Below, piece after piece: positions 811 to 63,681 of a stretch of DNA of 64,000 nt. A model generated the notes under the pieces. It searched no databases, was not told where the DNA came from, and saw only the letters and a list, made by a program, of their open reading frames with translations. Location of the stretch: positions 124,001 through 188,000 of the IMG/VR virus record IMGVR_UViG_3300046653_000093. One strand, written 5' to 3'. Both the position numbers and the translations under genes were made by a program. How positions within the stretch are numbered: the first letter of the stretch is position 1; the number at the start of each line of letters is the position of its first letter.

Positions 811-822
811 TTATTTCTCCAT

Positions 823-2193: not shown

Positions 2194-5193
2194 TTATGTT
2201 ACGCCAGAAGCGAACAAACCAGCAACTTGATTTGATGGAATCACCAATGGTGTATTATTCCATCCGGCTTTCTTGAGATATACCGTGATCATGATCTTGG
2301 TTCTCAATTCGTTATACAAGGCACTATTTGATATATCATTCATCGTAAGCGTCATCAAGCCAGTAGCCTGGTCCATATTTACGCCAATGATATTATCTAC
2401 AATAATACCGTAGCCATCCTGATCCATTCCATCCTGATTTGGGAATATTGATTGAATCGACACACCAAATCTCACTTGATTTTTAACAAATGCATCAAGT
2501 TTTACAGTAGTACAATCAGAAAACCTAGCCGCCGGATATCCAGCTGAAGTAAAACCATCTCCATCGTCTACAACAAGTTTCTGGAACACGTTGATTATAG
2601 CGTGATTGAACATTACCTCTTGCGGAAGTTCCAAGACAATAAAATGAATGTCAACGTCTTGCTTGAAATAGTTGCCATCCTTATCGATGATTTGCCCTTT
2701 GCCAATAATAAGATTATCCGGAACGAAGAAATCATTTCTTCCAGGATCGCATGCGCCTCCGAATTCAAATGGATCTATGCAAACAACAGGAGTTGTATTT
2801 GAGCACTGACCAGTTATTTGATCTACCAAGCTAGCAGTTGAGCTGGGAAATGTAAATGTCGCAGGAACAAGCCTGGCATTACTACTAACTTGAAGCATGT
2901 AGTCTTTCCAGAACAATATTGGGTTTACAACAAATGGTAGTGGGATAAATGGCACTGCAAGGAAAGCAGGATCATCAGCTGAAATATCCGGTATGCTATT
3001 ATAACCGTAGTATTGTAGCTCAATACTAGACAAATTAGATATATCTACTACATTTAGACTATCACCATTGATTCTAATATACCCATCGCAATTGTTGTAT
3101 CCATCATAACGACAGCAATCATAATAACCATCATAACGACCGGTTGGGTTTTGAACCTCTATTTCAAGGTGCGTAAAGCTAGAGCCTGCTGGGAATGAGT
3201 GATAGCCGTCCTTAGAAACATATGCTGAAATCCTATCAACATCTGCATGCGTAATATAGCCATCTCCATCAACATCAGCTCGAATGATCTCTAGAGTATC
3301 AAAAACCCCAGCATTAATTAGAGCCTGCGTTGATTCTAAAGATAACGATTGCCCAAGGAGAGCTGTGGCACGATCTATATCGCTTGAGTCAATAACTCCA
3401 TCGCCATTAACATCTCCATACCCATCTGTGCACAATCGTACGTTAGAAATGGTGTAACCAATACCTGCGCAATTATTATTTGGAATTAGTTTGCTACCAA
3501 TAAGCTGCTGCGAAATCAAATCAGGATTTGGATTTATTACAATAAACTTATTGCCCTTAGCTAATCCAGGGAAGATTTGAGTACCAGAAATTATGTTGTT
3601 CACTTTGGCATTGACATCTCGCGCACAGCCAATGATCAAAGGATCATTAGATTCACTCAATGTAGCCAAGTTGGCATTGGTAACGAAACTAAAACTTGGT
3701 TCGAACTGCTGGCGTGAAAAAACTGGATTGCCAGTACGCTCATCTTGTTGCTGTTGAGATTGTGATTCAATAGCTTCTACTACAGCAGTGTTTAGAGTGT
3801 TTTGCCCGGTATCTGCAAATGGGTTTTGGCCAAATGAATAATCTACAACCGCACCCAGTTCATTGACTATGGTCTTTGTAATCTGGACACCATTACCAGC
3901 ATCATAGGCCATACCATCAGCAACCTTGGCGGCATCTGACCATACTTGATACCAAATATCTTCTTCTGTAACATCTGTCCATTCACTGGTGAATATGGAA
4001 AGACGATCATCTGTACTCTGACTGTTTCCTATTCCCGTAAACAAAGTACCAACGCTACTGTCTCCGGCACGTCCAATTGAAATGGCATAATATTTACCTG
4101 GTACAATAACAGGATTTGATGCGTTACCAAGAATTGAATTGTTGTATATCAGGTCAATTGGTTGAAGAACATCAGTAAGAATGTAACCTAGATTCTGCAA
4201 GCTTTGCTTGTTGATGCTAAACTGAGTTATCGGAATAGGATTTGGATCAAATTCAATTGCCAACCCAGGCACCAATTCATTTGGAGAAGTAATGGTGCTT
4301 TGAAGCTCGTATACACTAACTACAAGCTCTCCACTCCAATCGAAATAATTGGCTATAACCGAACCATTCTTACGAACGCCAAGTAGAACGGTAATCTTCT
4401 GGATATTATTGCATTTGGCCAAAAACTTTTCAGCTACACGCGTTGTAACATCTCCAGTAGCAAATTCAAAATCTCGCTTCACAGTTGTATTGATTTGAAG
4501 AGCATCAACATTATATTGAGGCCCAATACCTGCCTGAATCGTTTGAGCTAAGGTAACCGCTGGGTTTGGAGATGAGTTTTTGAAATCTCTGAAAAATAAG
4601 TTCGGTTGCACATCTTGTGCAATCATAATAGGATCGCGAGACAACTCAAGTGCCGTTGTTTCTCGGATAACTACACGTCCCCCTAGAGCACGAGAACAAT
4701 TGTCATTACCAAGAAAGTCATTAAAGAATACCGAAAGTATTCGGGTGTAGTGTTTCTTGGTAACTTGCTTCTCTTTCTTGTAAAAGTAAAAACTATCGTA
4801 TTGTATGTTTTCCTGGAAATCCAAACCAATAATCAATACCTTGGTACTGAGACGGCCTCCAACATTCGAAAACCCATTAGCATCAGAATCAGATAGTTCT
4901 ACTTCAAGTTGATTTCCCAACTTACTATCACTCGGTTGCGCTAATGGCCTCAGACCAGTACCATCTAAATCGTGAGATGCTATCAGTGCCTCTTGATCAG
5001 AGAACATATTATCAGTATCAAAAACTACATTTTGAGCCGATGCAGATGGAAGTACGCCCGAGCCAAAGTGATTTTGTATAATCGAAGCATCAATCTTGAC
5101 ATTCCGATCTTGCTCTGTAGTCATATCGGTCTGATCGACTTGCTGACCGTCGTACCAAAGAACTTGAATTTGTGATACTGGATTTTGGTTCAT
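2194..5193 (-). CDS. Tail/baseplate-associated virion protein with a dockerin-like (paired EF-hand) domain
   Basis: Directly downstream of the wedge genes; GDVNGDGVIDSSD...ADVDGDGYITHAD duplicated Ca-binding loops; 7 DGY motifs. Confidence 0.6.
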   Translation of the reverse strand: MNQNPVSQIQVLWYDGQQVDQTDMTTEQDRNVKIDASIIQNHFGSGVLPSASAQNVVFDTDNMFSDQEALIASHDLDGTGLRPLAQPSDSKLGNQLEVELSDSDANGFSNVGGRLSTKVLIIGLDFQENIQYDSFYFYKKEKQVTKKHYTRILSVFFNDFLGNDNCSRALGGRVVIRETTALELSRDPIMIAQDVQPNLFFRDFKNSSPNPAVTLAQTIQAGIGPQYNVDALQINTTVKRDFEFATGDVTTRVAEKFLAKCNNIQKITVLLGVRKNGSVIANYFDWSGELVVSVYELQSTITSPNELVPGLAIEFDPNPIPITQFSINKQSLQNLGYILTDVLQPIDLIYNNSILGNASNPVIVPGKYYAISIGRAGDSSVGTLFTGIGNSQSTDDRLSIFTSEWTDVTEEDIWYQVWSDAAKVADGMAYDAGNGVQITKTIVNELGAVVDYSFGQNPFADTGQNTLNTAVVEAIESQSQQQQDERTGNPVFSRQQFEPSFSFVTNANLATLSESNDPLIIGCARDVNAKVNNIISGTQIFPGLAKGNKFIVINPNPDLISQQLIGSKLIPNNNCAGIGYTISNVRLCTDGYGDVNGDGVIDSSDIDRATALLGQSLSLESTQALINAGVFDTLEIIRADVDGDGYITHADVDRISAYVSKDGYHSFPAGSSFTHLEIEVQNPTGRYDGYYDCCRYDGYNNCDGYIRINGDSLNVVDISNLSSIELQYYGYNSIPDISADDPAFLAVPFIPLPFVVNPILFWKDYMLQVSSNARLVPATFTFPSSTASLVDQITGQCSNTTPVVCIDPFEFGGACDPGRNDFFVPDNLIIGKGQIIDKDGNYFKQDVDIHFIVLELPQEVMFNHAIINVFQKLVVDDGDGFTSAGYPAARFSDCTTVKLDAFVKNQVRFGVSIQSIFPNQDGMDQDGYGIIVDNIIGVNMDQATGLMTLTMNDISNSALYNELRTKIMITVYLKKAGWNNTPLVIPSNQVAGLFASGVT

Positions 5194-42363: not shown

Positions 42364-43176
42364 TTAAAGAATATCTTTGACAATATCAAATTTACGCCTC
42401 AAATACCTATCGGAATCTATAATATCTGAATACAGCCAATTAGCAATCTGTCTGCATATGTTGTTTCCATTATATTGTAAAAGTGAAGTTCTCCATCCGT
42501 TCAAAGACTTTTCTAAACATCTATCTGGTAAGCCTCCATACTCAACAAAGCAAGAATTCATTCCCCTTAAAAAATCTTCAGTACCTCTTGTAGAAAATAC
42601 CATCTGCCCTTTGTGATTTGGTCTGGATTTAGCTTTGTGAATTGCCCAACATCCATCTCCGTCAAAATAACCACGACAAAAAGCAGATAACATATCTTGT
42701 TGTATATTTGGAAATTTTAGAATCTTTGTTTTCCTTGGTAAAATGCCAAACCTCTGTAAATCAACAACCATTTTTGGAGAACAAAAAGCAAATGAATAGC
42801 ATACGGAATTTTCAGACTCAACACGTGTTAATTTGTGTTCTGATCCAAGGTCTTTTTTAAATAACCTTAAATGATCAATATCCTTTTCGGCTAATGCAAG
42901 CCTAACTTGATTCTTGAAAACACACCCATCAGCAGCAATAAAACCAGCCCAATAACAAGATTTTAAAGTGTCATTTGAAAAGAAATCATGATTTACTGGC
43001 AGATTACCATGATTATTGGACTTATAAACAATACCAAAACGCCTCATCATTGAGGATACAACGGCGTGTGAGGTATTATATTTTTCAGCTACTAACCTAA
43101 GAGAGCCTAATAATTCATAATCATTCAACAAAGATATTTTGGTTATTTCTTGAGAATTTTCAAATCTAGCATTCAT
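42364..43176 (-). mobile_element. Free-standing double-motif LAGLIDADG homing endonuclease
   Basis: YWAGFIAADG and FCRGYFDGDG motifs; N-terminal HTH-like SLRLVAEKYNTS; C-terminal YLRRK. Confidence 0.9.
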
Positions 43177-43190
43177 AAAATAATACTGAA

Positions 43191-45284
43191 CTATTCCATG
43201 TTTGATAGTATTATTGTGTGCGAATGATTTAAAACGGTACCCACAATACCCGCCGAGATCGGGTGGTTGTGCCCACGATCTATACTTGTCATTTGATTTA
43301 TTTGGGAAATATGCCTAATCTTCTCATTAATGGTGATTCTATGCATATGGGCGGGTATGCCTCCAGGGCCCATTACCATTCCAATGGAAGTAAGAATCTC
43401 AGATGGAAGAGTACTAGTGTCACGAATTGAACGAACTTGATAAATAGGATCTGTCTTACGTACACGTACTGCGGTGAACTTCTGAGCACCTGACTCAAAA
43501 AGCATAGTCCTATTTCTATCTACATCGATGATTTCATAACGCCATTCTTCAGTTCCATCTTGATTGAATCTGATTATAAAATCCCCATCCTTGACTGTTG
43601 GTGTCACCAACGTCCAACAATTAGCAATATAGGTATTCTCAATACCTGCGTCTTCACGTTTGAAATCTTCCTTGGTTGGTCCAAAGCGAACCAAAATCTT
43701 GCCGTCACTTTCACGTGGATTGAAATATTGTTCATATCCAGTTACCAAAGAAGTTCCATAAGTATCTATTCCGCGATACGTTGTATTTTCGCGTGTAGAG
43801 CTGGTATGCCGCGATTGCTTTCCTGACCATTGACGTCGAAACAAAACTACCCGCTCTCCAGTGACCTGAAGTAGATACTCCTCTCTCATATCCATGTGTT
43901 CTTGAACGCTCAACCCGCGTACGGACCCATCACATTCCGATCCATCGGCATACTCTCCACCAAAATAGGTTCCTACGCACTTTCCTGATAACCAATCTGG
44001 CAAGAATGTACGATCCCAACCCGCTTGATCGTAGATTGGAAATCCGGCATTTGCAACATCTACAACATTGAGGTTGCCAGTTCCTGATAAGATATCTGTA
44101 CGTTCCCGGAACCCATCTTTATTGGTTCTAGCATACTGCTCATCAAATCTGATGGTAACCATACCAATGGCCACATTAAGATCCTGCCAACCTTCCCAAA
44201 GGCGCACAAATGGATTGTCGTGATGATGTCGGTATCCGTCATATCCATCGATAGTATGCGGACGAGCACCGCTAGGGCCTCCATTAACCACATACCCATC
44301 AACATCCACTAGAAAGTAGTCCCCACGTTTGAATGGAATCGTTCCATTATTAATGGCAAAACTCAAAATACCATTAGAAACAATAACTCCATCAGGATTC
44401 CATATTACAGGATCTCCGTAGCCATCTAAAGCAGAGCCTGTTAGAGATCCAATCGCCCCAAACTTAGCATAGCCATCATTTTCAGAACCATCTAGCGAAC
44501 AGAAAATCTTCCAATCTTGAATTATAGATTTTCCATCTATCAATTCCAAATTTGAAATATAGCCATTACCAACATTATTTCCAACACTATAACCATCTAT
44601 ATAAGATAGACTACTCAAAATATCATCTGATAAATAACCACGTTGTAATCCAGATAGATTTGGGAAAATCAAATATTCTGGACAATGACAATGATGCTCA
44701 CGACGTTCTGAGCAATGGCAATGATGTCCCTTATCGCAATGGTGCTCTTCTGAGCAATTGCATTTTGGCCTTAATGTTCCAACATCAACATGAGAATAGA
44801 ATATTAGTTCGTGTCCAATTTTGACAACTCCAATTGGCGGGAACCCGGCAACATCATTCAAATACATGATGTCATCGGTAGCTGTCATATTCTGAACCAA
44901 AACAGCTTCTGGGGCTATTTTAGATCCTGGATCGCCATCTAAGAGCTGATCGTATAGAAGCGTTCCGGATGCATATGCAGATCCCTTTACAGCAAAATAA
45001 TAGGTTCTTCCAGGGCTAAATGCATCAAAAATATTAAGGGACAGAAACTGATCTTTGGTATTCGGCCTAACTATTAGCTTTACGCCCTCATCATAAATCT
45101 TAGTCTGATTTGTAGACCAATATATGTTGTAAAAAAGATCCCAATTACCAGGCTGCTTTTGCTGAATGTATTCCTTGTACCATTGAAGCGCAACAGTATA
45201 CCCATCCCCACCACATACCACTGTACGAACGCCATGGAGTGATGCGTCAAATGTACGCAGAAATACTGGAGGGTTGCATGCCAT
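43191..45284 (-). CDS. Neck/head-closure-like protein with FN3-like N-terminus, His/Cys insert and sheath-like domain
   Basis: VALQW...YNIYWS...PGRTYYFAVK (FN3-like); C-terminal GERVVLFRR...YGT...GY...WTL.TPTVKDGDFII...RYEI (stopper-like); HxH repeats at the C-terminus. Confidence 0.55.
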   Translation of the reverse strand: MACNPPVFLRTFDASLHGVRTVVCGGDGYTVALQWYKEYIQQKQPGNWDLFYNIYWSTNQTKIYDEGVKLIVRPNTKDQFLSLNIFDAFSPGRTYYFAVKGSAYASGTLLYDQLLDGDPGSKIAPEAVLVQNMTATDDIMYLNDVAGFPPIGVVKIGHELIFYSHVDVGTLRPKCNCSEEHHCDKGHHCHCSERREHHCHCPEYLIFPNLSGLQRGYLSDDILSSLSYIDGYSVGNNVGNGYISNLELIDGKSIIQDWKIFCSLDGSENDGYAKFGAIGSLTGSALDGYGDPVIWNPDGVIVSNGILSFAINNGTIPFKRGDYFLVDVDGYVVNGGPSGARPHTIDGYDGYRHHHDNPFVRLWEGWQDLNVAIGMVTIRFDEQYARTNKDGFRERTDILSGTGNLNVVDVANAGFPIYDQAGWDRTFLPDWLSGKCVGTYFGGEYADGSECDGSVRGLSVQEHMDMREEYLLQVTGERVVLFRRQWSGKQSRHTSSTRENTTYRGIDTYGTSLVTGYEQYFNPRESDGKILVRFGPTKEDFKREDAGIENTYIANCWTLVTPTVKDGDFIIRFNQDGTEEWRYEIIDVDRNRTMLFESGAQKFTAVRVRKTDPIYQVRSIRDTSTLPSEILTSIGMVMGPGGIPAHMHRITINEKIRHISQINQMTSIDRGHNHPISAGIVGTVLNHSHTIILSNME

Positions 45285-47587: not shown

Positions 47588-50500
47588 TCAATACAGCGAG
47601 CTAAGTCCAGTATATAGTTCGGTTGCTTCGCCAAGCACATCAGCTTGTGTTGGAGTTTTAATCATCAATCGTCGTACAGACATATCTCCAGTTGATTGGC
47701 CACCAAAATGTCCAGCATTTATATATAAACGATCTACGCCAATTAAAGTACCTCCGAAATCATTCACTATAGATGTTCCTGATGGATCAATTTTCCAACA
47801 ATGAGTGCCATCAGCAGCATAAACAGCATATTGTAGGGTAGTGTCTGCTACAATTGTATTTCCTATAACAGTTTCAACGCTGCCTCCTTGGCCATAACGG
47901 ATAGCTAATAGAGTAGTACCGCTTTGCGCCAACGTAAAGCTCTGAGCAATACCAGAATCAATCTGGCCTAAATAAATTGTATTCCCAGCTTCTGTAACAC
48001 CAGTCCACCACATAATACCAATTATAAATGGTGGTGTACTGCTTCCGCCATATACTCCCCAATGATAGCCATCAATCAAACTAAGAATCTTACCAGGAGC
48101 CATTGTAGCTATGCGTCGGCCTCCAACAGGATCTGTTGTCATTTGAGGTGTGCTAGTAGCAGTAAGCACCGCAGTGCCCTCACGACTTGCCCATGATGTA
48201 ATCGTGGTACCAGTCAATGATACCCCATGTTCCATATCCCAATAACCACCAGTACTCCACGTTCCACGTTGTGGCAGATCCGGTTCAATGATAGCAAGTC
48301 GTGCTGATTGTTGATGCCTGACACGCCAAGCCTCTCGACCAATTTCAACACATTGAGGTGCTGAATAATGTATCTGCCACAGCGTGCGATCTCCACCATC
48401 CAATCGCGTTAGATATGTACCAGGAACTGTTGCGGCAACCTGATCTTGTGCTGCGCGTACTGCATCAGAACTCATGTATGTCACAGTTGGTGTTGTGGTA
48501 TTCGGGCCTAACCATTCATTCAGACGATGAATTCCGAATTGAATATTCGCACCATATAATCCACGAATCCACGAAATAAGGGCAGTCAAATCTGCGGCAT
48601 AGGTAGCGGCAAGTGTACCAATTGTATTTGCCTCTGCTTCTCCCTGGATCCATAGAGCGTCCGTGAACTCATATAGACTAGTACCAAGTGCAGCGAGTGC
48701 ACCGGCCACAGTAGCCGGCAAATATACATAATCTGCACCGCTTGGCAACCAAGAAGTAATGGGTGTGCCGCCATGCCCACAATTAATTACAATAGCAGGA
48801 ATATTATTTTTAACTGCCTCTGCCTGCCAACCTGTTCGTATGCCGGAGCCACTAGGGCCTGAAATTGGATCTGTATCCCATCCAGTCGTTGTAAGATATC
48901 CGCCATTGTCTCCTAGATAAAATGCATATCCAGGACGAGCTAGTATACCATTACCAACTAGTGTATTAGCGCCTGCCTTGATTGATACCGCGTTACTCTG
49001 ACCAAAAACCAATGTAATTGGCCATTGTGTAGGTAAGTAAGCCATTGCACGCAACTCAGTACATGATACAGTTAATTGTGGAACTGTCCACGCTGATCCG
49101 AAATGCTCTGCCAAATTTTCAACAACTGATCTTGCATTACCACCAAACAGCGTTCTGCTCGTGAAAGTTGCCGTAGTTGATGTGGCCATCACTCCACCAG
49201 CCGCCAAAGTTCCATCAATATATAAGGAGACTGAACTTGGGCCCGCAACAAGCTGCAGACATACCGGGACTGGTGCAACTGGTTGGGTTGTTAATTGAGT
49301 GACAGTGGCTCCGGCATCATTGGTTCGAGTGATAGACCAGACTCCAGTTGGATCGACACTCACTGCAAGACGGCTTGTCGTGCCATTGAGTGAGTATACC
49401 TGTCGCGCAGTACTAGTTGGGCTATGCTCTCGAACCCAAATACACATTTCGATTGTAGCTAATGTACAAGATGGTATTGAGTAGGTTAGAGCACATGAAT
49501 TACCATATCCTTCAACAAGTGCCGAATGACCAAACCAAATATCAGGTGAGAGTACAGGGCAGTAGCCATCAGTCCCCTGGGCCAGGATTAAATCAGTACT
49601 ACCACGAGCAGGAGTAATATAGGATACTTTATCTTGTTGTAAATGCACATTAGATACTGTAATTACTGGGCCAGTTAGAGGAAATCTAGATGCGCCTCTG
49701 GTGCCTATATCACACAACTGCCCTTCAGCAACATTAACTGGAATAAGATTCGTTTCATAAATAACGTCAATCCATCCATCAGTTCTCGCACTAAAGCTGT
49801 ATCCATTATGATATCCAGATGGAGTTGTTAATTCATAAATTGTATAAGAAGTATCGCTACTTGGATATCTTAAACTTTGCAATGAAGGCAATTCAATAAA
49901 TTGTGTAGATGAAAATTCAAAAAATAGATGTTTTGCGTCGTATTCAGCTCCCGGTAAATACGAGAATGTAGCCCGTATCCAGCCAACGCTAGCTAGATTT
50001 CCCGGAGCAAGTCTAGCAAGACGACTACTGGTACCTGATTCAGTCAATGCAGATGCACGCGGAATTCCATCTTTATCAAATAAACTATTGACCGCAGTAA
50101 GCCCAGTCAATGTCCACGTGCCAGCAACTGGATTATTTCCAGACAGCGGCTTAATCTGAACCGTCTGCGTCTGAGAAAAATCAAAGAGCGTTGATGTGTA
50201 CTCAGCTAGAGTGGCAATGGGCGGTGGGCCTTGCCATTCTGCCTCTGTTGCACTTATAGCAGTCAAAACTTGCCCAGGAGTTGGTGCCGCTGAGGCAGAT
50301 ATAGAAACTACCGTAGTAGCAGTCTGTAATCCAGTAGCGTATTGAGCCACACCAATTGGTGTATGTACATGAGACGCATTAGTATTATCCTGTAGATATA
50401 GAGTTACAACGGTTGTGCCGCTTCCGCCAATTTTTATAGCTTTATATTTGATTACCAATCTATCTGTTGATGTTACAGGGAACATTCCTTCGAACGGATT

Positions 50501-51091
50501 TGAATTATATAAAGTAGACGTATTACCAGTAATAATTGGTGTTGTTGTAGAAAATAAATAAGTATCGATATTACTAAGGTTACGAGAATATCCATCAATT
50601 TCTACAACTACATATCCATCATTATTATCGACGCTTATAAAAGTATCAAATGCCCATTCTCCCTGTTGCACAAAAGGCTCTCCAATTGGTACTTCTGAAA
50701 CGAACGTACCAAGGACTACCGTTTGTCCAGAAGATATTGGTGACTTTAGAGTAATTTCAGAGCCAGGAGTATATTGACTAGTTGGAGTTAGCTGATAACC
50801 ATCAGGCAACGCATACCCATCAAGATAGAATACCTCTCCTGCTGCAATGCTTGGAACTGGTGTCTGCCATTGAGCAGATGTGCCATTTATAGCCGTTACA
50901 ACTTGTCCAACGGTTGGCGCTGTCGCTGAAGAAACCGAAACTACGGTAGATGATGTTCTGATTCCGGAGGAAATCCGATCATTTGAAAGGCGAGAGTCGT
51001 TTTGTGAAACATAACCATCCGACATACTATCAAGTTTGGCGCTATCTTCAACGGTCATGAATCCAAAATCATCAGTGAATTTCTTTAACAT
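47588..51091 (-). CDS. Fiber protein with LamG-like and SGNH/SASA carbohydrate esterase domains
   Basis: GQSN, GGTPITSW, WIQGEAE, VRAAQDQVA, IHYS (DUF303/SASA pattern); duplicated TVVSVSSATAPTVGQVVTA...WQ repeat; SLYIDG. Confidence 0.7.
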   Translation of the reverse strand: MLKKFTDDFGFMTVEDSAKLDSMSDGYVSQNDSRLSNDRISSGIRTSSTVVSVSSATAPTVGQVVTAINGTSAQWQTPVPSIAAGEVFYLDGYALPDGYQLTPTSQYTPGSEITLKSPISSGQTVVLGTFVSEVPIGEPFVQQGEWAFDTFISVDNNDGYVVVEIDGYSRNLSNIDTYLFSTTTPIITGNTSTLYNSNPFEGMFPVTSTDRLVIKYKAIKIGGSGTTVVTLYLQDNTNASHVHTPIGVAQYATGLQTATTVVSISASAAPTPGQVLTAISATEAEWQGPPPIATLAEYTSTLFDFSQTQTVQIKPLSGNNPVAGTWTLTGLTAVNSLFDKDGIPRASALTESGTSSRLARLAPGNLASVGWIRATFSYLPGAEYDAKHLFFEFSSTQFIELPSLQSLRYPSSDTSYTIYELTTPSGYHNGYSFSARTDGWIDVIYETNLIPVNVAEGQLCDIGTRGASRFPLTGPVITVSNVHLQQDKVSYITPARGSTDLILAQGTDGYCPVLSPDIWFGHSALVEGYGNSCALTYSIPSCTLATIEMCIWVREHSPTSTARQVYSLNGTTSRLAVSVDPTGVWSITRTNDAGATVTQLTTQPVAPVPVCLQLVAGPSSVSLYIDGTLAAGGVMATSTTATFTSRTLFGGNARSVVENLAEHFGSAWTVPQLTVSCTELRAMAYLPTQWPITLVFGQSNAVSIKAGANTLVGNGILARPGYAFYLGDNGGYLTTTGWDTDPISGPSGSGIRTGWQAEAVKNNIPAIVINCGHGGTPITSWLPSGADYVYLPATVAGALAALGTSLYEFTDALWIQGEAEANTIGTLAATYAADLTALISWIRGLYGANIQFGIHRLNEWLGPNTTTPTVTYMSSDAVRAAQDQVAATVPGTYLTRLDGGDRTLWQIHYSAPQCVEIGREAWRVRHQQSARLAIIEPDLPQRGTWSTGGYWDMEHGVSLTGTTITSWASREGTAVLTATSTPQMTTDPVGGRRIATMAPGKILSLIDGYHWGVYGGSSTPPFIIGIMWWTGVTEAGNTIYLGQIDSGIAQSFTLAQSGTTLLAIRYGQGGSVETVIGNTIVADTTLQYAVYAADGTHCWKIDPSGTSIVNDFGGTLIGVDRLYINAGHFGGQSTGDMSVRRLMIKTPTQADVLGEATELYTGLSSLY

Positions 51092-51102
51092 GTTTATCCT
51101 AT

Positions 51103-52008
51103 TTAGACGGGACTAACCGAAGTAACACCAAATGGCCTTGATGCATTGATTGCATATGTTTCCCATTTGAATTTATATTCATTAAATGAGCTTTGTCCGC
51201 TGTTCCATGTCCAAGCAATAATAGATTCATCGTATGAACTTGTACTCGCAAAAGCAAATTGTGTTGTTGTCTGAGATCCAGGGACAATGGTTATTTCACC
51301 AATAGAACCAATAGAGGTCTCTCGGCTAAATGTGATTACAGCATCCTCTGGTAACCCTCCGGGAGGAGTTACTAACACGTAACCGTCAACCAGCGTGGCA
51401 TATCCAAAACCAACATCACTGCGTACTTCAACATCCTTTTCTGTCCAAGAAACAGAAGCTATGTATGTTCCAATCGCTGGGACACCATTAGGTATACACA
51501 GCCCATGTATATATAATCCTGTGCCTATTCGAGTCATTAGCCTTGGATAATGAACGGCCTTTGAAAGGTCTGGAAATATTACTTGCTGAACAACTGGAAC
51601 ATAATATCCATCATTTGGCCCACGATGATTAACGTGAAAACAATCGTGATGATGACGGCGATGATGGTCATGACAATGATAACCATCAAAACAACTATCA
51701 TGATCAAAATGATTATGATAGTTGTGGTTATTCCACCATCTGTGCCATTCGTGACGATCTGTGGTGTGTCTTACACATGCCGTCCATAAATGATGGTGAT
51801 GATGATGGTTAGAATATCCATCATATCCATCTGGATAGTATCCATCCGGTGGATCTGAATAATATCCGTCTGGCAGAAGATAGCCATAGCCATCTAGCCA
51901 ATTTCCATAGCCGTCCAAATCAGCAGGGTATCCGTTACTATCTAGCACTTGAACTATCAAACGAACCGTCTGTCCAGTATTAGCAAATATGTAATTTACA
52001 GAACCCAT
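51103..52008 (-). CDS. Ig-like virion protein with an inserted DGY array and His-rich segment
   Basis: Flanks resemble the N-domain of the 303-aa protein; 9 DGY; HHHHHH...HCHDHHRRHHHDC. Confidence 0.6.
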   Translation of the reverse strand: MGSVNYIFANTGQTVRLIVQVLDSNGYPADLDGYGNWLDGYGYLLPDGYYSDPPDGYYPDGYDGYSNHHHHHHLWTACVRHTTDRHEWHRWWNNHNYHNHFDHDSCFDGYHCHDHHRRHHHDCFHVNHRGPNDGYYVPVVQQVIFPDLSKAVHYPRLMTRIGTGLYIHGLCIPNGVPAIGTYIASVSWTEKDVEVRSDVGFGYATLVDGYVLVTPPGGLPEDAVITFSRETSIGSIGEITIVPGSQTTTQFAFASTSSYDESIIAWTWNSGQSSFNEYKFKWETYAINASRPFGVTSVSPV

Positions 52009-52022
52009 GCCTATATGCCCGG

Positions 52023-52496
52023 TTATTCGTCGTCAATATTTTTCTTGAAAATAGGATCTACGGCCAAAATCGGAGCACGATCTGCCGCATCCATATCTGC
52101 ATTTTCTGCGGCAAAATCTTCAGCAGACCCCTCATCCATATCCAAATCAGGAAACTCAACTTGTTCAATCTCTGGTGGTTTCCTAACAGTACGAGTTGAA
52201 CCCATATCCAAAACATGAGCCACTTCAATCTTCTTGGTAAATATCTGGGGCGCTACAGACCTAATCTTGATATGCTGTCCTTTCTTGTAAATTGAACCGC
52301 TTTGAATGCTATCATCAATCTGCTTTTTTGTGATATTATACATGGATAAGCCATTTTTCTTTTTAGCAAGCAAATTTAAGCTTTGCCCACGGCGAACTGT
52401 AATGGCTAGATCACTAATTGTAATATCTTGAAAACGATTTATATTCGTAACCCAAAGCTCTTCCGGCTTGGCTAGAGGATAAAACCTTTCCTGCAA
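52023..52496 (-). CDS. Hypothetical protein with an acidic C-terminus
   Basis: ORF 52023..52589 overlaps the csp gene; likely TTG start near 52496. Confidence 0.55.
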   Translation of the reverse strand: MQERFYPLAKPEELWVTNINRFQDITISDLAITVRRGQSLNLLAKKKNGLSMYNITKKQIDDSIQSGSIYKKGQHIKIRSVAPQIFTKKIEVAHVLDMGSTRTVRKPPEIEQVEFPDLDMDEGSAEDFAAENADMDAADRAPILAVDPIFKKNIDDE

Positions 52497-52506
52497 TCTC
52501 TGGCTA

Positions 52507-52785
52507 CTACTTTTCAACTTTATCCTCAGATACAATGGCACAATCGCAGACGGTTGTGCTGTCAGCTTCGCTGACAACAGATACTTCAATCGCCTTTGGT
52601 TGCTTTCGATTATTCAAACCAACAGAGAATATGACCTCTTGACCTTTCTTCAAAGTCTTGAAACCTTCGGTGATAATGTCAGACCAATGTATAAATAAAT
52701 CGGCTTCATCTACTCTGGAGATAAATCCGTAACCAAGCTTGGCATCAAACCAAACAACCTTTCCAACATACTTTTCTTCTTGCAT
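52507..52785 (-). CDS. csp: Cold-shock domain protein (CspA family)
   Basis: GKVVWFDAKLGYGFI (RNP1), DLFIHWSDI (RNP2), GFKTLKKGQEV; GAGGA RBS. Confidence 0.93.
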   Translation of the reverse strand: MQEEKYVGKVVWFDAKLGYGFISRVDEADLFIHWSDIITEGFKTLKKGQEVIFSVGLNNRKQPKAIEVSVVSEADSTTVCDCAIVSEDKVEK

Positions 52786-53130: not shown

Positions 53131-53424
53131 TTAATCCACCCGAACCATTCCCTTATGTTGATCAATGGCTTCTTGATATCCGGTATCTGGTGGCAAAACA
53201 CCAACGCCATCAACTACCAAACCACCTACACAACCAATGGTCTTATGAATTTCTGCTATTCCCAGGGCAGCGATTTGATGACGCTCAAGATCAGACTTCG
53301 CTCCCTTAGCTGCATTCTGAAACTTCTCAAGAAGCTTCCTTACTTTATCTTCGCAGCCTTGCTGACGCGCCAACTGCAAAATGATTCTGATAGTCTCTCG
53401 CTCTGATTGAATTCTTCTTGTCAT
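53131..53424 (-). CDS. Hypothetical protein
   Basis: 97-aa ORF with ATGA overlap to the upstream gene. Confidence 0.6.
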   Translation of the reverse strand: MTRRIQSERETIRIILQLARQQGCEDKVRKLLEKFQNAAKGAKSDLERHQIAALGIAEIHKTIGCVGGLVVDGVGVLPPDTGYQEAIDQHKGMVRVD

Positions 53425-53750
53425 AAAAATACCTTCATTGATTCAGCTTTGGATTTGAAAGGAGGGTTGGCCAAACCAGGGATATTGCTTTTACCATTCT
53501 CTTCATATACCAATGTACGTTTATATGGCAATTTAGTAGATGGAAAAATTCCAATGATCTTGATCTGCGGAGGGGCTGCGTGAATTAGATTATGACAATT
53601 ACTACAGATGATTGCGATATTCATCTCGTGATTGCTAGTATCCGGGTCCGTCCGCTCTACAATATGATGCTTGTGAAGAACAGCTGTATTATTCTCTTCA
53701 CATATCTCACATACACTAGGAACCAGCCTTACTTTCTTACGCCTTCCCAT
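53421..53750 (-). CDS. Small HNH endonuclease
   Basis: CEIC...LHKHHI...NIAIICSNCHNLIH; start likely MGRRKK right after the IscS stop. Confidence 0.8.
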   Translation of the reverse strand: MGRRKKVRLVPSVCEICEENNTAVLHKHHIVERTDPDTSNHEMNIAIICSNCHNLIHAAPPQIKIIGIFPSTKLPYKRTLVYEENGKSNIPGLANPPFKSKAESMKVFL

Positions 53751-53751
53751 A

Positions 53752-54840
53752 TTATGTGAATATATCAGGCTTTGGACAATATTTAACGATGGCCTGAGCT
53801 GCAACTCTAGCCTCTCTATCTCCGTAATCTCCCCATTGGGAAATTCGAATATTGTCCTGAGAACTTCCACCATAACCAAGCGCCGTCATGATTGGATTCG
53901 TATTTGAGTGCAAAGATCCACAAGCAGAACCAAGGCCCACAAATATTCCTTCAGCTTCCAATTGAGCCATTACATGTGGACCCATCTTTTTCCCGATGTT
54001 CAAGAAAGTAGCATGTGGAACTCTAGTTGAATTCTCGCCAATTATTTCAATACCAATTGAACTTACTGCTGATTCAATTATAGAGCGAAATGTCAATGCC
54101 CTATGATATCTTGGCTGTAATGTCTTGATAGCTTCTTCTAATGCCACAGAAGCGGCTATAATCATTCCAGCATCAGGTGTTCCTGGCCGATCAAAGTAAT
54201 ATCTACTTCCAGTCCCAAATTCTCTCCACCATTTATTATCTCTTATATATAAGAAACCAACATTTACAGGACCACCAAATTTATGAGCCCCAAATGCAGC
54301 TATCATCAAATTTGGTATACTAGAAACATTAACTGGAATCTTACCAAGTGATTGGCTCATATCACAAAAGAATGGAACCTTAATGTTCTCTATATCTTGT
54401 ATTGTGCCAGTTTCATTCTGTACATGAATACATATAAAAGCAGACTTTTCAGGAGGTGTAAATGTACAAGCTACAATTCCGTCTTTATTTACAAATAAAT
54501 CATTGTTACCAAAGAGTTCTCTAGCTTTTATTGCCACTGATTTATGTTCGATTGTAGAACAGTATACATTCTTGAAATTCTGTTCGCGTAGAAGTTCCAG
54601 GCCCCATTCGCAGGCTTGAGTGCAGGACGAAGTAAATATGATTTGATTGGGATTTTCTGCGCCGATCAATTTGGCAATTTTGGTTCTAGCTGCCTCAATT
54701 TCAGAAGCTGCTTGCCGTCCTGGCATTGAAATTGACATAGCATGGCCATGTCCCCCAATGGACTTATTGAAGTTTATGTATGCTTCAAGAGCTTTTGGAT
54801 GAAGTGGAATATGAGCATTCGAGTCAAGAAATAATTGCAT
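53752..54840 (-). CDS. iscS: Cysteine desulfurase, IscS/NifS-like (PLP-dependent, class V)
   Basis: LDSNA, IIFTS, TIEHKSV, NETGTIQ, DMSQSLGK, AHKFGGP (PLP Lys), RPGTP, GSACGS (catalytic Cys). Confidence 0.88.
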   Translation of the reverse strand: MQLFLDSNAHIPLHPKALEAYINFNKSIGGHGHAMSISMPGRQAASEIEAARTKIAKLIGAENPNQIIFTSSCTQACEWGLELLREQNFKNVYCSTIEHKSVAIKARELFGNNDLFVNKDGIVACTFTPPEKSAFICIHVQNETGTIQDIENIKVPFFCDMSQSLGKIPVNVSSIPNLMIAAFGAHKFGGPVNVGFLYIRDNKWWREFGTGSRYYFDRPGTPDAGMIIAASVALEEAIKTLQPRYHRALTFRSIIESAVSSIGIEIIGENSTRVPHATFLNIGKKMGPHVMAQLEAEGIFVGLGSACGSLHSNTNPIMTALGYGGSSQDNIRISQWGDYGDREARVAAQAIVKYCPKPDIFT

Positions 54841-62621: not shown

Positions 62622-63623
62622 TTATCCGACGATTGTTGACTTGCGAGAAGCAGCAACGGCGCGTGGGTTCACGATACCGATACCAATCTCTTCCGACACA
62701 ACCCATCCTAGTTTTAACTGTTTTGGTTCATCAGCTGGGATAACTTCGATGTCCTGACGGATTGGAAGCACACCAACGAACTCTGGGTCAGAGGCACCGT
62801 AGACTGTTCCTGGTGGAACGATCTTCGAAACCATAATGTCAGCGCCCCAGATGTGAGCATACAGACCTGTCTGAAGAATCTCACGCTGCGTAACTGGATC
62901 AATTTCACCAGCCGAGGTTCCGGAAGATGCCCAGTTAAGGATGTCCGTAAACTCATTGATGTTCATGAAGTACTTCGTTGTTACAAGGTCCCAACGATCA
63001 ATCTGAACCTTGATCTCAACCAAGTCTCTCTTCAACAGACCGCTGTCTGTGATGTCCTGCAACGTGTTTTCAACACTCGATGCTGCGTCGATAGCCGCAA
63101 AGATGTTTGCATCTTCTTGAGCCATCAATTCTTGACGGGCCTTTTGAACGGCACGGTCAATAACGTTGAATCGACGACGACGAACCTCAGAGATACGAAC
63201 TGTTGGGTTCGAATAAAGCTCGAACGTTGGCACAACGATACGATCACCGAACACACGAGACTCACCACCGGTACCATTGCTGGAAATGACGGTAGCTGCT
63301 ACGTCAATATCACGCTCATACTTCGGGTCAACGCCTTGTGGAAGAGGATCAACCACCAACAGACGACGGGCAATTCCCTGATAATCCAAGTTACGACGAA
63401 TTGGGTTCGCCATAGCCTGAGCAAGAGCAAGCTTTCCTTCCTGTGTCATAATCGCACGAGCAATAAGCTCATCGCGCTTTTCGTCATTCAAACCTGGTTG
63501 GCCCGAAAGAGCCATATTTGAAGGCTGGCCCTCTTCGAGGATCGCAGCGTACTTAACTAGCGTATTCAATGCATCCTTTACGGATGTGGCATTCATACCA
63601 CCACGGGTATCAAATAAAGACAT
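62622..63623 (-). CDS. Major capsid protein (HK97-like fold)
   Basis: PIRRNLDYQGIARRLLVVDPLPQG, ELMAQEDANIF, GWVVSEEIGIGIVNPRAV; AGGAG RBS before MSLFDT (63623); strong downstream terminator. Confidence 0.88.
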   Translation of the reverse strand: MSLFDTRGGMNATSVKDALNTLVKYAAILEEGQPSNMALSGQPGLNDEKRDELIARAIMTQEGKLALAQAMANPIRRNLDYQGIARRLLVVDPLPQGVDPKYERDIDVAATVISSNGTGGESRVFGDRIVVPTFELYSNPTVRISEVRRRRFNVIDRAVQKARQELMAQEDANIFAAIDAASSVENTLQDITDSGLLKRDLVEIKVQIDRWDLVTTKYFMNINEFTDILNWASSGTSAGEIDPVTQREILQTGLYAHIWGADIMVSKIVPPGTVYGASDPEFVGVLPIRQDIEVIPADEPKQLKLGWVVSEEIGIGIVNPRAVAASRKSTIVG

Positions 63624-63681
63624 ATATAATCTCCTAATGTTTGTTTGTAAGCTGCCAAAATCCATCAACAGCTAGCGGAAG

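What the first reader, a model, noticed from the sequence alone, without database searches (positions are those of the whole stretch)
51604..51915. DGY array plus poly-His segment inserted into one loop of an Ig-like domain
Seen: the paralogous domain in the 303-aa protein reads VDLDSFPTV, whereas here DLD is followed by about 100 extra residues (GYGNWLDGYGYLLPDGYYSDPPDGYYPDGYDGYSNHHHHHHLW...CFDGYHCHDHHRRHHHDCFHVNHRGPNDGYY) before VPVV. This is the densest DGY cluster (8 copies) and the clearest sign that DGY is displayed in an exposed, disordered insert. The Tyr/Gly/Asp plus His-rich composition recalls metal- and Tyr-crosslinked adhesive proteins (analogy only).
Basis: partly seen in the sequence, partly recalled or inferred. 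Interest (0 to 1): 0.7.

Follow-up and report, generated by a model that had tools for sequence, protein, structure and literature searches.

The report
Conserved DGY–histidine loop in phage protein
A small antibody-like (Ig-fold) protein of an uncultured giant phage from peat has one loop enlarged from about 15 to about 119 residues by a strictly conserved tyrosine-rich Asp-Gly-Tyr array and a histidine-rich cassette. It is the densest case of an Asp-Gly-Tyr motif that marks the outer virion proteins of this whole phage group, and the motif's function is unknown.

Summary
Residues 32-135 of the 301-aa ORF at 51103-52008 (-) hold 8 DGY. None of 200,000 shuffles of the insert exceeds 4.

The 303-aa "paralogue" is only a weak comparator. 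Orthologues are better: a 111-aa protein sits at the same syntenic place in related jumbo phages, and 118 family members were aligned.

- **Ground state:** the family is an unannotated seven-strand Ig-like sandwich. Its B-C loop is 15-16 residues, with consensus DGYG-x-R-x-DGY.
- **This protein:** the loop is 119 residues. It consists of a 35-aa DGY array, a 64-aa His/Trp/Arg/Cys cassette found only in a subclade, and a closing PNDGY. A tailspike-type domain sits in the F-G loop.
- **Selection:** the insert is not free-evolving. dN/dS is 0.02-0.03 for the array, the lowest in the gene, and 0.05-0.14 for the cassette.
- **Reality of the sequence:** it is identical in contigs of several peat metagenomes.
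- **Wider pattern:** DGY is the most over-represented tripeptide of the genome (75 against 10 expected), is confined to the virion module, is enriched in relatives, and co-occurs with a large glycosyltransferase island.

Most likely this is an exposed, CDR-like binding surface. A glycosylation sequon or a metal-folded cassette remain open.

The parts
51103..52008 (-). Whole gene, 301 aa plus stop (P0002). It is the orthologue of a roughly 111-aa unannotated Ig-like phage protein and lies in the conserved gene run Aminotran_5 - HNH - x - CSD - 150/188 aa - [this] - 303 aa.
51916..52008 (-). Residues 1-31: strands A and B of the beta-sandwich (MGSVNYIFANTGQTVRLIVQ...), followed by the start of the B-C loop.
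   Evidence: AF2 pLDDT 89-97, strands 4-10 and 14-20. Invariant columns are listed.
51811..51915 (-). Residues 32-66: the DGY array (DGYGNWLDGYGYLLPDGYYSDPPDGYYPDGYDGYS), with six DGY. It is an expansion of the DGY turn motifs native to the B-C loop.
   Evidence: Conserved in 12 of 13 close homologues. dN/dS 0.02-0.03 with dS 0.65-1.5. A graded series of loop lengths is seen across the family.
51619..51810 (-). Residues 67-130: the His/Trp/Arg/Cys-rich cassette (22 His, 4 Cys, 4 Trp, 6 Arg, no Lys). It includes the H6 run (51790-51807), the invariant core W75..R80.T82....E87W88 (51733-51786), and the CFDGYHC / DCFH motifs with one DGY.
   Evidence: Present in 7 of 13 homologues and absent in 6. 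Conservation pattern. dN/dS 0.05-0.14. AF2 shows only a short helix at 85-93, with pLDDT 35-46.
51604..51618 (-). Residues 131-135 (PNDGY): the closing DGY of the ancestral loop, directly before strand C (YVPVV).
   Evidence: Near-invariant D133, G134 and Y135. The family consensus is ..R.DGY.P.V.
51421..51603 (-). Residues 136-196: strands C to F of the Ig-like core.
   Evidence: AF2 pLDDT 92-97. VIA-align Z about 8 to MG, filamin and Ig-like domains.
51193..51420 (-). Residues 197-272: a second insertion, in the F-G loop. It is a tailspike C-terminal-type beta domain (K1-lyase_C-like) and forms the predicted trimer interface. It contains the ninth DGY, in a beta-hairpin turn (TLVDGYVLV).
   Evidence: VIA-align Z 11.3, 10.3 and 9.8 to 9k4a, 7w1c and 7eea. 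Pfam PF24146 scores 18.8 bits here, below the cut-off, but 74 bits in homologue P0015. Trimer model.
51106..51192 (-). Residues 273-301: strand G and the conserved C-terminal tail (KWETYAINASRPFGVTSVSPV).

Best explanation
**Anatomy (shown).** The gene encodes the orthologue of a roughly 111-aa, so far unannotated, seven-strand Ig-like beta-sandwich protein. It lies in the head-proximal part of the virion gene module of uncultured phage-G-like jumbo myoviruses.

In the family's ground state the B-C loop is 15-16 residues with DGY at both ends (DGYG-x-R-x-DGY). Here it has grown to 119 residues in two layers:
- The DGY turn unit has multiplied into a 35-aa Tyr/Asp/Gly/Pro array.
- A 64-aa His/Trp/Arg/Cys cassette has been inserted at a sub-site that holds other cassettes, or none, in relatives.

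The F-G loop carries a tailspike-type domain that probably trimerises.

**Function (inferred).** In Ig topology the B-C and F-G loops lie at the same pole, like CDR1 and CDR3 of antibodies or the BC and FG loops of monobodies. The protein would then be a probably trimeric display scaffold on the virion surface, and the insert would be its exposed working surface.
- The tyrosine-rich array would be a multivalent, low-affinity binding patch for a conserved ligand, most plausibly a host or environmental polysaccharide.
- The His-rich cassette would add pH- or metal-dependent charge. It would be polycationic in acid peat water and able to bind metal near neutrality.

The same DGY unit is scattered over the other outer virion proteins of the clade, which suggests one shared ligand or one shared modification.
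For: **Orthology and loop series**
- The profile search found 148 representatives, most of them 110-117-aa bare domains.
- Loop length runs 15-16 -> 19 -> 25-28 -> 33-45 -> 56 -> 76 -> 98-121 residues, with DGY number rising in step.
- The bare 111-aa orthologue sits in identical synteny in a 218.8-kb relative.

**DGY placement**
- DGY occurs in the B-C loop of 100 of 118 members (248 copies) and almost never in strands.
- DGY-rich expansions also occur in the D-E loop (L016) and the F-G loop (P0074, there with Cys and His).

**Fold**
- AF2 with 118 sequences gives the core pLDDT 89-97 and the insert 35-53.
- VIA-align gives Z about 8 for the Ig core and Z 10-11 for the tailspike-type domain 2.
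- The best, non-significant, PDB profile hit is an antibody VL domain in which the loop aligns with CDR-L1 (E 0.088).

**Selection**
- The array has Sd 10-15 against Nd 1-2 and dN/dS 0.02-0.03. The cassette is at 0.05-0.14 and the folded core at 0.09-0.18.

**Trimer**
- Complex prediction with three copies scored 0.67, against a best control of 0.01.
- The mark was reached by 20 of 30 proteins solved as pairs of one chain and by 1 of 23 solved as single chains.
- The runs agree in at least 78% of contacts, and the partner's pLDDT is at least 57.
- The interface lies in domain 2 plus residues 3-9.
- The job used my own alignment and three copies, unlike the calibration, and the pass may reflect memory of tailspike trimers.

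**Genome and clade**
- DGY is seen 75 times against 10.2 expected (z = 20) and is the top tripeptide. 69 of the 75 lie in ORFs of the 64-kb virion window, all on the coding strand.
- The DGY-coding pattern is enriched in relatives G001-G005 but only mildly in phage G and Tunturi_5.
- DGY sites turn over between fibre orthologues while their density is kept.
Against: - No experiment or proteome shows that the protein is in the virion. Its location in the particle is inferred from gene order alone.
- No ligand is known.
- A receptor-binding paratope in an arms race would be expected to vary, yet the array is nearly invariant in this subclade. This fits a conserved ligand, a structural role or a modification signal equally well.
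- That the B-C and F-G loops share one pole is taken from canonical Ig topology. It was not measured on coordinates.
- The trimer interface does not involve the insert, and orthologues lacking domain 2 would not trimerise this way.
- Low pLDDT in the insert could mean disorder, or only too few sequences, or a need for metal.
- The fold matches to the Ig core (Z about 8) are at the level the tool calls a 'common arrangement'.
Confidence: 0.45

Rival explanations
1. DGY is a sequon: a short recognition motif for a phage-encoded post-translational modification of outer virion proteins. The most plausible candidate is O-glycosylation of the tyrosine by the adjacent glycosyltransferase island. The B-C-loop array would then be a dense, mucin-like attachment site carrying up to 8 glycans per chain.
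For: - DGY is selected at the protein level, with free codon choice and no flanking DNA signal.
- It is confined to a subset of virion-module proteins and is at background elsewhere in the genome.
- Sites are gained and lost between fibre orthologues while density is maintained, as with glycosylation sequons of viral surface proteins.
- A roughly 17-kb island lies directly downstream of the fibre genes. It holds 5 GT2, one GT1/4, a GT11, a STELLO-like glycosyltransferase, 3 nucleotide-sugar epimerase/dehydratases and an FkbM methyltransferase.
- GT2 clusters are present in the DGY-enriched relatives G001, G002, G003 and G005. They are absent or scattered in phage G and Tunturi_5, which show little enrichment.
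- Tyrosine O-glycosylation exists in bacterial S-layer proteins (PMC2943079).
- Strict conservation of an apparently unstructured array fits an enzyme recognition site.
Against: - No DGY sequon is described in the literature library searched.
- The co-occurrence rests on seven related genomes and is not phylogenetically independent.
- Phage glycosyltransferase clusters can instead glycosylate DNA (bioRxiv 10.1101/2023.12.21.572611; PMC13326640) or host polysaccharide. A Tet_JBP search found nothing, but the search was inconclusive.
- In the one confidently modelled case (residues 208-210) DGY is simply a beta-hairpin turn. In fibre orthologues it alternates with NGD/NGN turns, so a structural turn preference explains part of the signal.
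Confidence: 0.2
2. The His/Trp/Arg/Cys cassette is a small ordered domain that folds only around metal ions (Zn, Fe or Ni, or an Fe-S centre). It would stabilise or cross-link the loop, as HxH motifs do in phage tail fibres. This is compatible with the main explanation for the DGY array.
For: - A sequence signature is conserved across seven diverged homologues: W75, R80, T82, E87 and W88 are invariant, and NCFD, HC(N/H)D and DC(F/I)H are present in 4-5 of them.
- dN/dS is 0.05-0.14, like the folded domains.
- There is a Cys/His swap at position 78 (C in five, H in P0006).
- HxH-type motifs occur in the cassette (HNH, HCH, HDH).
- Other Cys/His clusters occur in this phage's 697-aa structural protein (KCNC..HHC..HHCHC..HHCHC), in family member P0087 (four CDH..EDCRD..C.WH repeats), and mixed with DGY in P0074.
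- A NifS-like cysteine desulfurase is conserved a few genes upstream.
Against: - The numbers of His (7-22) and Cys (1-6) vary widely between orthologues, and the invariant residues are not metal ligands.
- P0011 and P0013 lack the Cys-containing half.
- There is no Pfam, PDB or Atlas match.
- AF2 sees only one short helix.
- Variable ligand positions fit a compositionally selected His-rich region better than a fixed site.
Confidence: 0.3
3. The insert is functionless low-complexity sequence produced by replication slippage, an assembly or chimera artefact, a diversity-generating-retroelement target, or a mobile insertion (intein or intron).
For: - The composition is strongly biased.
- The opposite strand is ATG/ATC-rich.
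- One 9-bp unit is tandemly duplicated.
Against: - Strong purifying selection acts with saturated synonymous change.
- The DNA is identical in contigs from several runs and studies and in a second 392-kb contig.
- Seven homologues carry the cassette and twelve carry the array.
- No template repeat is present in the genome, and no reverse transcriptase in the 91%-complete contig.
- The insert is read in frame, has no endonuclease or splice-junction residues, and is shorter than any mini-intein.
Confidence: 0.03

Closest known systems
Ig-like accessory domains on tailed-phage virions (for example T4 Hoc, or Big_2/FN3/I-set domains appended to capsid and tail proteins)
   Same: It is a small beta-sandwich encoded among structural genes and dispensable-looking. 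In relatives it occurs alone or fused to the N- or C-terminus of long fibre or tailspike-like proteins (P0054, P0072, P0077, P0118, P0131). The presumed role is weak adhesion to carbohydrates.
   Different: It matches no Pfam or PHROG Ig family. It has its own signature (PGQ..., DGYG.R.DGY.P, TGLY, GTY, RPFG.SSVSP). No known phage Ig domain carries a conserved DGY array or a His-rich cassette in its B-C loop.
Antibody CDR loops and tyrosine-rich synthetic binders (FN3 monobodies diversified in the BC and FG loops); own knowledge
   Same: Insertions are concentrated in the B-C, D-E and F-G loops of an Ig-type scaffold. The composition is dominated by Tyr, Gly and Asp, the residues that dominate natural and minimalist synthetic paratopes. 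The profile aligns weakly with VL domains, with the loop at CDR-L1.
   Different: There is no significant sequence relationship (E 0.088). The loop is about ten times longer than a CDR. It is conserved rather than hypervariable within the subclade, and no diversification machinery is present.
K1 capsule-specific lyase / tailspike C-terminal domain (Pfam PF24146; PDB 7w1c, 9k4a; cyanophage Pam1 tailspike 7eea)
   Same: Residues 197-272 superpose with Z 9.8-11.3 and rmsd 1.6-1.9 A. Homologues exceed the Pfam cut-off. The predicted trimer is formed through this domain.
   Different: Here the domain is nested in the F-G loop of an Ig domain instead of ending a beta-helix tailspike. It is not the part the finding is about.
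His-rich metal-binding segments: HxH iron sites of phage tail fibres (T4 gp37/gp12), His-rich tails of Hpn, SlyD and HypB, and Zn/His-rich structural proteins of marine invertebrates
   Same: It has very high His content with HxH spacing, an association with Cys and Trp, and a location in an extracellular structural protein of a probably trimeric assembly.
   Different: There is no sequence similarity to any of them. Ligand positions are not conserved between orthologues, and metal binding is untested.
Glycosylation sequons on viral and S-layer surface proteins (N-x-S/T; the Bacteroidetes D-S/T-A/I/L/V/M/T motif; Tyr-linked S-layer glycans, PMC2943079)
   Same: It is a three-residue motif scattered over surface proteins, with site turnover at maintained density, next to a large glycosyltransferase island.
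   Different: No DGY sequon is known, and no modification has been shown.

Membership tests
Ig-like beta-sandwich fold (E-set / MG / filamin-like) | A seven-strand two-sheet sandwich recognisable by structure comparison | tested here: met
   The AF2 core has pLDDT 89-97 with strands A-G. VIA-align Z is 7-8.9 to macroglobulin, filamin, Ig and small phage baseplate domains over residues about 3-292 with the insert trimmed. Z about 8 is only moderate. The BFVD top hit is a 122-aa uncharacterised phage protein with TM 0.72.
Any curated Ig-domain sequence family (Pfam Big_1/2/3, FN3, I-set, MG2; PHROGs) | Score above the family's curated cut-off | tested here: not met
   There are no Pfam or PHROG hits for the Ig part of P0002 or for the bare members P0023, P0024, P0025 and P0047. 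The Atlas shows only 'hypothetical protein' viral clusters, with one MG2-labelled cluster at rank 65.
New DGY-loop Ig family (this work; alignment A2) | Shared signature PGQ / DGY-flanked B-C loop / PDL..GYP..M / TGLY / GTY / RPFG.SSVSP, with significant profile score | tested here: met
   P0002 scores E 4.7e-44 against the family HMM. There are 148 representatives at E <= 1e-3 and 66 at <= 1e-10. An orthologue lies in conserved synteny.
   BLASTP E 0.32. hhalign probability 7% with E 0.005. It is the second-best hit of the family HMM in the genome, at E 0.017. The motifs line up by eye (DLD..P.V, M.RIG.G.Y).
K1-lyase_C (PF24146) for residues 197-272 | Pfam gathering score, or a clear structural match to the solved domain | tested here: met
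   P0002 scores 18.8 bits, below the 27-bit cut-off. Homologue P0015 scores 74 bits in three copies. The structural Z is 10.3-11.3 at rmsd 1.6-1.9 A.
Diversity-generating retroelement target (variable region) | A reverse transcriptase and a near-identical template repeat in the genome | tested here: not met
   There is no RVT_1 match in the 91%-complete 392-kb contig. There is no second copy of the insert DNA in the genome. The loop is conserved, not hypervariable.
Intrinsically disordered low-complexity insert | Low predicted order together with fast, composition-only evolution | tested here: inconclusive
   Low pLDDT of 35-53 is met. Fast evolution is not met: dN/dS is 0.02-0.14, and the array sequence is nearly invariant at saturated dS.
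Metal-binding Cys/His domain (zinc finger / knuckle, HxH fibre site, Fe-S) | Conserved ligand positions, and a match to a known metal-binding family or demonstrated metal binding | tested here: inconclusive
   The Cys motifs are conserved in 4-5 of 7 homologues, but the invariant residues are W, R, T, E and W. There are no family matches. Metal binding is not testable with these tools.
Protein glycosylation sequon | Demonstrated modification at the motif by a cognate transferase | not testable with these tools
   Only circumstantial evidence exists: the glycosyltransferase island and the clade-level co-occurrence.

The most novel reading that the evidence does not exclude
Asp-Gly-Tyr is a previously unknown three-residue sequon. 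Through it, a clade of phage-G-like jumbo phages decorates its outer virion proteins, probably with fucose- or deoxyhexose-containing glycans on tyrosine, using its own roughly 17-kb glycosylation island. The B-C-loop array of this Ig-like protein would be a purpose-built, multi-site glycan (or cross-link) display module, and the His-rich cassette beside it a pH or metal switch.
Probability: 0.15. Interest if true: 0.85.

Novelty: new variant of a known kind. Interest (0 to 1): 0.6.

Why it matters
Ig-like domains on phage particles are common, but their ligands and the rules that shape their loops are mostly unknown. This family offers several handles on that question.

- **A natural series:** one loop grows stepwise from 15 to about 120 residues by multiplying a single three-residue unit. 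It resembles a natural monobody library, and the largest versions are held under very strong purifying selection.
- **A clade-wide signal:** the same unit is the most over-represented tripeptide of the genome. It is restricted to outer virion proteins, shared by related jumbo phages from peat and lakes, and accompanied by a large sugar-biosynthesis and transferase island.
- **Two useful outcomes:** if DGY is a binding micro-site, it points to how these phages hold on to polysaccharide-rich hosts or matrices. If it is a modification signal, it would be a new sequon and a directly testable case of programmed virion glycosylation in bacteriophages.
- **A practical substrate:** the array is a compact, well-defined peptide for the decisive experiments.
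- **A pH question:** the His-rich cassette raises the possibility of pH- or metal-switchable adhesion in acidic peat.

Tried and rejected
**Negative searches**
- tblastn of the protein against 50,697 phage records found nothing. The family HMM found nothing in Bacillus phage G.
- Pfam and PHROGs on P0002 and on bare family members gave no Ig-family hit.
- A word-index search restricted to the cassette (residues 66-135) returned only the 91%-identical P0003.
- phmmer of the cassette against all ORFs of the genome found no paralogue.
- An Atlas search with the insert gave no usable hit.
- Literature searches for DGY motifs or repeats in phages found nothing relevant. The paper on tyrosine O-glycosylation sites (PMC4397588) is not held.
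- A search for Tet_JBP, which would mark DNA glycosylation as the role of the glycosyltransferase island, found nothing. The control genomes also gave nothing, so this is uninformative.

**Weak or uninformative results**
- The first AlphaFold run, with 13 sequences, was poor (mean pLDDT 49). Only the 118-sequence alignment resolved the core.
- Foldseek against the PDB found only domain 2.
- The PDB profile search gave only non-significant hits.
- Pieces identical to the gene occur in two peat RNA libraries, but DNA carry-over cannot be excluded, so transcription is not shown.

**Hypotheses rejected**
- A DNA-level motif: codons are free, there is no flanking signal, and the plus-strand frames hold none.
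- Recent slippage.
- An assembly artefact.
- A DGR target.
- An intein or intron, judged by inspection.
- DGY enrichment caused by many hidden copies of this Ig domain in the big fibre proteins. The family HMM finds none there.
Full report
**1. What is there**

The window is part of an IMG/VR virus record of 215,808 bp. A second contig of 391,957 bp, estimated 91% complete, is 100% identical over the 6.9 kb compared.

All large ORFs run on the minus strand. They include:
- a major head protein at 62622-63668 (phrog_2522), 53% identical to gp27 of Bacillus phage G;
- a Baseplate_J protein;
- collagen-like and other fibre proteins.

This is therefore the virion module of a phage-G-like jumbo myovirus. 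Runs that hold the sequence are peat metagenomes and some lake-water metagenomes.

The finding lies in the 301-aa ORF at 51103-52008 (-).
- eight DGY, at residues 32, 39, 47, 55, 60, 63, 108 and 133;
- a run of six His at residues 68-73;
- 22 of the protein's 24 His and 4 of its 5 Cys.

In 200,000 shuffles of the insert's own residues none reached five DGY.

**2. It is real and it is protein-level**

The stretch is identical, without a single difference, in contigs of runs X1, X3 and X4, and in pieces from X5 and X6. These come from several studies.

DGY uses all four Gly codons and both codons of Asp and Tyr. The flanking bases carry no information, and the plus-strand frames of the window contain no DGY at all, against 73 on the minus strand. 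Tandem Repeats Finder sees only one 9-bp doublet.

There is no second copy of the insert DNA in the genome and no reverse transcriptase. Slippage, artefact and DGR explanations all fall.

**3. The right comparators**

That similarity is weak:
- BLASTP E 0.32;
- hhalign probability 7%;
- HMM E 0.017.

A protein search gave 12 close homologues of 194-303 aa. An exhaustive profile search gave 148 representatives, most of them 110-117 aa.

In related contigs the gene sits in the same run, Aminotran_5 - HNH - x - cold-shock domain - 150 aa - [gene] - about 300 aa. In a 218.8-kb relative the protein at that place is a bare 111-aa domain. The 301-aa protein is thus an orthologue of a 111-aa protein with two insertions.

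None of these proteins matches a Pfam or PHROG family in the Ig part.

**4. Anatomy**

With the 118-sequence alignment, AlphaFold2 gives a confident seven-strand sandwich:
- residues 1-30 and 134-196 plus 273-290, pLDDT 89-97;
- a confident nested domain at 197-272;
- a low-confidence insert at 31-133 (pLDDT 35-53) with one short helix at 85-93.

VIA-align matches the core to macroglobulin, filamin, Ig and small phage baseplate domains at Z about 8. It matches the nested domain to the C-terminal domain of the K1 lyase, a Klebsiella phage depolymerase and the cyanophage Pam1 tailspike at Z 9.8-11.3.

By strand order the finding's insert is in the B-C loop and the nested domain in the F-G loop.

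A three-copy complex prediction passed its mark:
- The score was 0.67, against a best control of 0.01.
- The mark was reached by 20 of 30 proteins solved as pairs of one chain and by 1 of 23 solved as single chains.
- The runs agree in at least 78% of contacts, and the partner's pLDDT is at least 57.
- The job used my own alignment and three copies, unlike the calibration.
- The interface lies in domain 2 and residues 3-9, not in the insert.
- The pass may reflect memory of tailspike trimers.

**5. The loop across the family**

In about 80 of 118 members the B-C loop is 15-16 residues with consensus Q-T-x-DGYG-x-R-x-DGY-x-P. DGY is therefore native to both ends of the loop.

From there a graded series leads to 19 residues (DGYDGY), then 25-28, 33-45, 56 and 76 residues (ten DGY in P0039), and to 98-121 residues in the seven proteins that also carry the His-rich cassette.

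DGY occurs in this loop in 100 of 118 members (248 copies) and essentially never in strands.

The same loop accepts other cargo:
- a roughly 75-residue beta domain in P0020, P0022, P0034 and P0119;
- a Gly/Asn/Val-rich segment in P0018, at the very sub-site where the His cassette sits.

DGY-rich expansions also occur in the D-E loop (L016). They occur too in the F-G loop of P0074, there mixed with Cys and His (DGYCDGYHGYYDGYYYDGYHDGYCDGY...). P0087 ends in four CDH..EDCRD..C.WH repeats.

In Ig topology the B-C, D-E and F-G loops share one pole. This is own knowledge and was not measured here. The best PDB profile hit, though not significant, is an antibody VL domain with the loop at CDR-L1 (E 0.088).

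**6. Two layers in the insert, both constrained**

The close homologues show two independent layers:
- The array NWLDGYGYLLPDGYYSDPPDGYYPDGY is present in 12 of 13.
- The cassette is present in 7 of 13.

Nei-Gojobori estimates against four cassette-bearing homologues:

| Region | dN/dS | Note |
|---|---|---|
| DGY array | 0.02-0.03 | 10-15 synonymous against 1-2 non-synonymous changes in 30-35 codons |
| His cassette | 0.05-0.14 | |
| Rest of the Ig core | 0.09-0.18 | |
| Domain 2 | 0.06 | Against P0003 |

The array is the most constrained part of the gene.

In the cassette the invariant residues are W75, R80, T82, E87 and W88. The motifs NCFD, HC(N/H)D and DC(F/I)H are kept in four or five of the seven. 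His number ranges from 7 to 22 and Cys from 1 to 6, and the H6 run occurs only in this phage and its 91% relative.

This looks like a real module with a conserved Trp/Arg core and compositionally selected His. It does not look like a fixed metal site or like junk.

**7. DGY beyond this gene**

DGY is the most over-represented tripeptide of the genome, at 75 against 10.2 expected (z = 20). 69 of the 75 lie in ORFs of this window.
- They concentrate in the 2265-, 999-, 1167-, 697-, 821-, 277- and 129-aa proteins.
- They are absent from the major head protein and the 1708-aa protein.

Counts of the DGY-coding pattern against the reversed-pattern control:

| Genome | Coding-strand count | Control |
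|---|---|---|
| G001 | 106 | 26 |
| G002 | 51 | 4-6 |
| G003 | 83 | 17 |
| G004 | 66 | 4 |
| G005 | 70 | 0-6 |
| Bacillus phage G | 52 | 19 |
| Tunturi_5 | 33 and 23 | 17 and 14 |

The enrichment is strong in relatives G001-G005 and only mild in phage G and Tunturi_5.

In orthologues of the 2265-aa fibre (60-65% identical) three DGY sites are invariant. Many others are gained or lost, alternating with NGD, NGN, DSI, DNY or SGS.

In the one confidently modelled case (TLVDGYVLV, residues 206-214) DG forms the turn of a beta hairpin. The family HMM finds no hidden copies of the Ig domain in the fibres.

**8. Context that bears on mechanism**

Directly downstream of the fibre genes lies a roughly 17-kb island. 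It contains:
- five GT2, one GT1/4, a GT11 and a STELLO-like transferase;
- three nucleotide-sugar epimerase/dehydratases;
- an FkbM methyltransferase.

GT2 clusters are also present in G002, G003 and G005, and follow the fibre genes in G002 and G003. Phage G has none above cut-off and Tunturi_5 has two scattered ones.

This matches the DGY enrichment, but over few and related genomes. Phage glycosyltransferase clusters can also serve DNA hypermodification (bioRxiv 10.1101/2023.12.21.572611; PMC13326640). A search for Tet_JBP was uninformative.

Tyrosine-linked glycans exist on bacterial S-layer proteins (PMC2943079). No DGY motif is described in the library searched.

A NifS-like cysteine desulfurase is conserved four genes upstream. 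The 697-aa structural protein carries a dense Cys/His cluster and a DGYDGYRHHH stretch.

**9. Verdict**

It should be re-based on orthologues rather than on the 303-aa neighbour.

However, 'disordered' is not a safe conclusion given the very strong purifying selection.

I rank the explanations as follows:
- An exposed, CDR-like binding surface on a probably trimeric virion-surface scaffold, with the His cassette as a charge or metal modulator: about 0.45.
- A metal-folded cassette, compatible with the first: about 0.3.
- DGY as a modification sequon: about 0.2.
- Junk or artefact: effectively excluded.

The function is inferred throughout. What is shown is the anatomy, the family series, the selection, the clade-wide enrichment and the genomic company it keeps.

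Noticed in passing
Whole window (minus strand); relatives G001-G005: DGY is the most over-represented tripeptide of the genome (75 against 10.2 expected, z = 20). It is confined to a subset of virion-module proteins. The coding pattern GAYGGNTAY is 4- to 16-fold enriched on the coding strand of related jumbo-phage contigs, but only about 2-3-fold in Bacillus phage G and Tunturiibacter phage Tunturi_5.
   Followed up: partly
window 130-1944, continuing in G000:C1:109033-124096 (locus L023): A roughly 17-kb glycan island lies directly downstream of the tail-fibre genes. It holds five GT2, one GT1/4, a GT11 (fucosyltransferase family), a STELLO-like glycosyltransferase, three GDP-mannose-dehydratase/epimerase-type enzymes and an FkbM methyltransferase. 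Its target (virion proteins, DNA or host polysaccharide) is unknown.
   Followed up: partly
window 43191-45284 (-), residues 174-204 = 44673-44765, and 44220-44249: A 697-aa structural protein carries a dense Cys/His cluster (KCNCSEEHHCDKGHHCHCSERREHHCHCPEY), a DGYDGYRHHH stretch, and HxH motifs near its C-terminus. This is a second case of DGY plus His/Cys in this phage.
   Followed up: no
window 53752-54840 (-): A class-V aminotransferase has the hallmarks of a NifS/IscS-type cysteine desulfurase (an HK pyridoxal-phosphate motif and a GSAC loop, by inspection). It is conserved in synteny with an HNH endonuclease and a cold-shock-domain protein inside the virion module of all relatives examined. 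This is an odd place for such an enzyme.
   Followed up: no
window 47588-51091 (-): A 1167-aa protein has a sialate-O-acetylesterase-type (SASA) domain, a ConA-like lectin domain and seven DGY. It is inserted between the finding's gene and the 303-aa gene. In relatives those two genes are adjacent or are separated by a different, shorter gene.
   Followed up: no
proteins P0074 and P0087 (family members from other metagenomes): P0074 carries a roughly 90-residue DGY/Cys/His/Tyr array in the F-G loop. P0087 ends in four repeats of CDH..EDCRD..C.WH. The Ig scaffold has acquired Cys/His-rich cargo repeatedly.
   Followed up: no
window 42364-43176 (-) and 53421-53879 (-): A LAGLIDADG-type and an HNH-type homing-endonuclease-like ORF sit inside the structural module. 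The HNH gene is missing in one relative (L006).
   Followed up: no
G000:C1:107624-109018 (-): A tubulin/TubZ-like (PhuZ-type) protein is encoded next to the glycan island. It is a jumbo-phage hallmark.
   Followed up: no
window 2194-5193 (-), residues 592-659: A 999-aa fibre-like protein has a dockerin-type calcium-binding repeat in which the loop reads DVDGDGYITHADV. Here DGY is part of an EF-hand-like loop.
   Followed up: no
window 52023-52589 (-) against 52507-52785 (-): The 188-aa ORF as listed (TTG start) overlaps the cold-shock-domain gene by about 80 bases. Orthologues are 150-163 aa, so the true start is probably further downstream.
   Followed up: no
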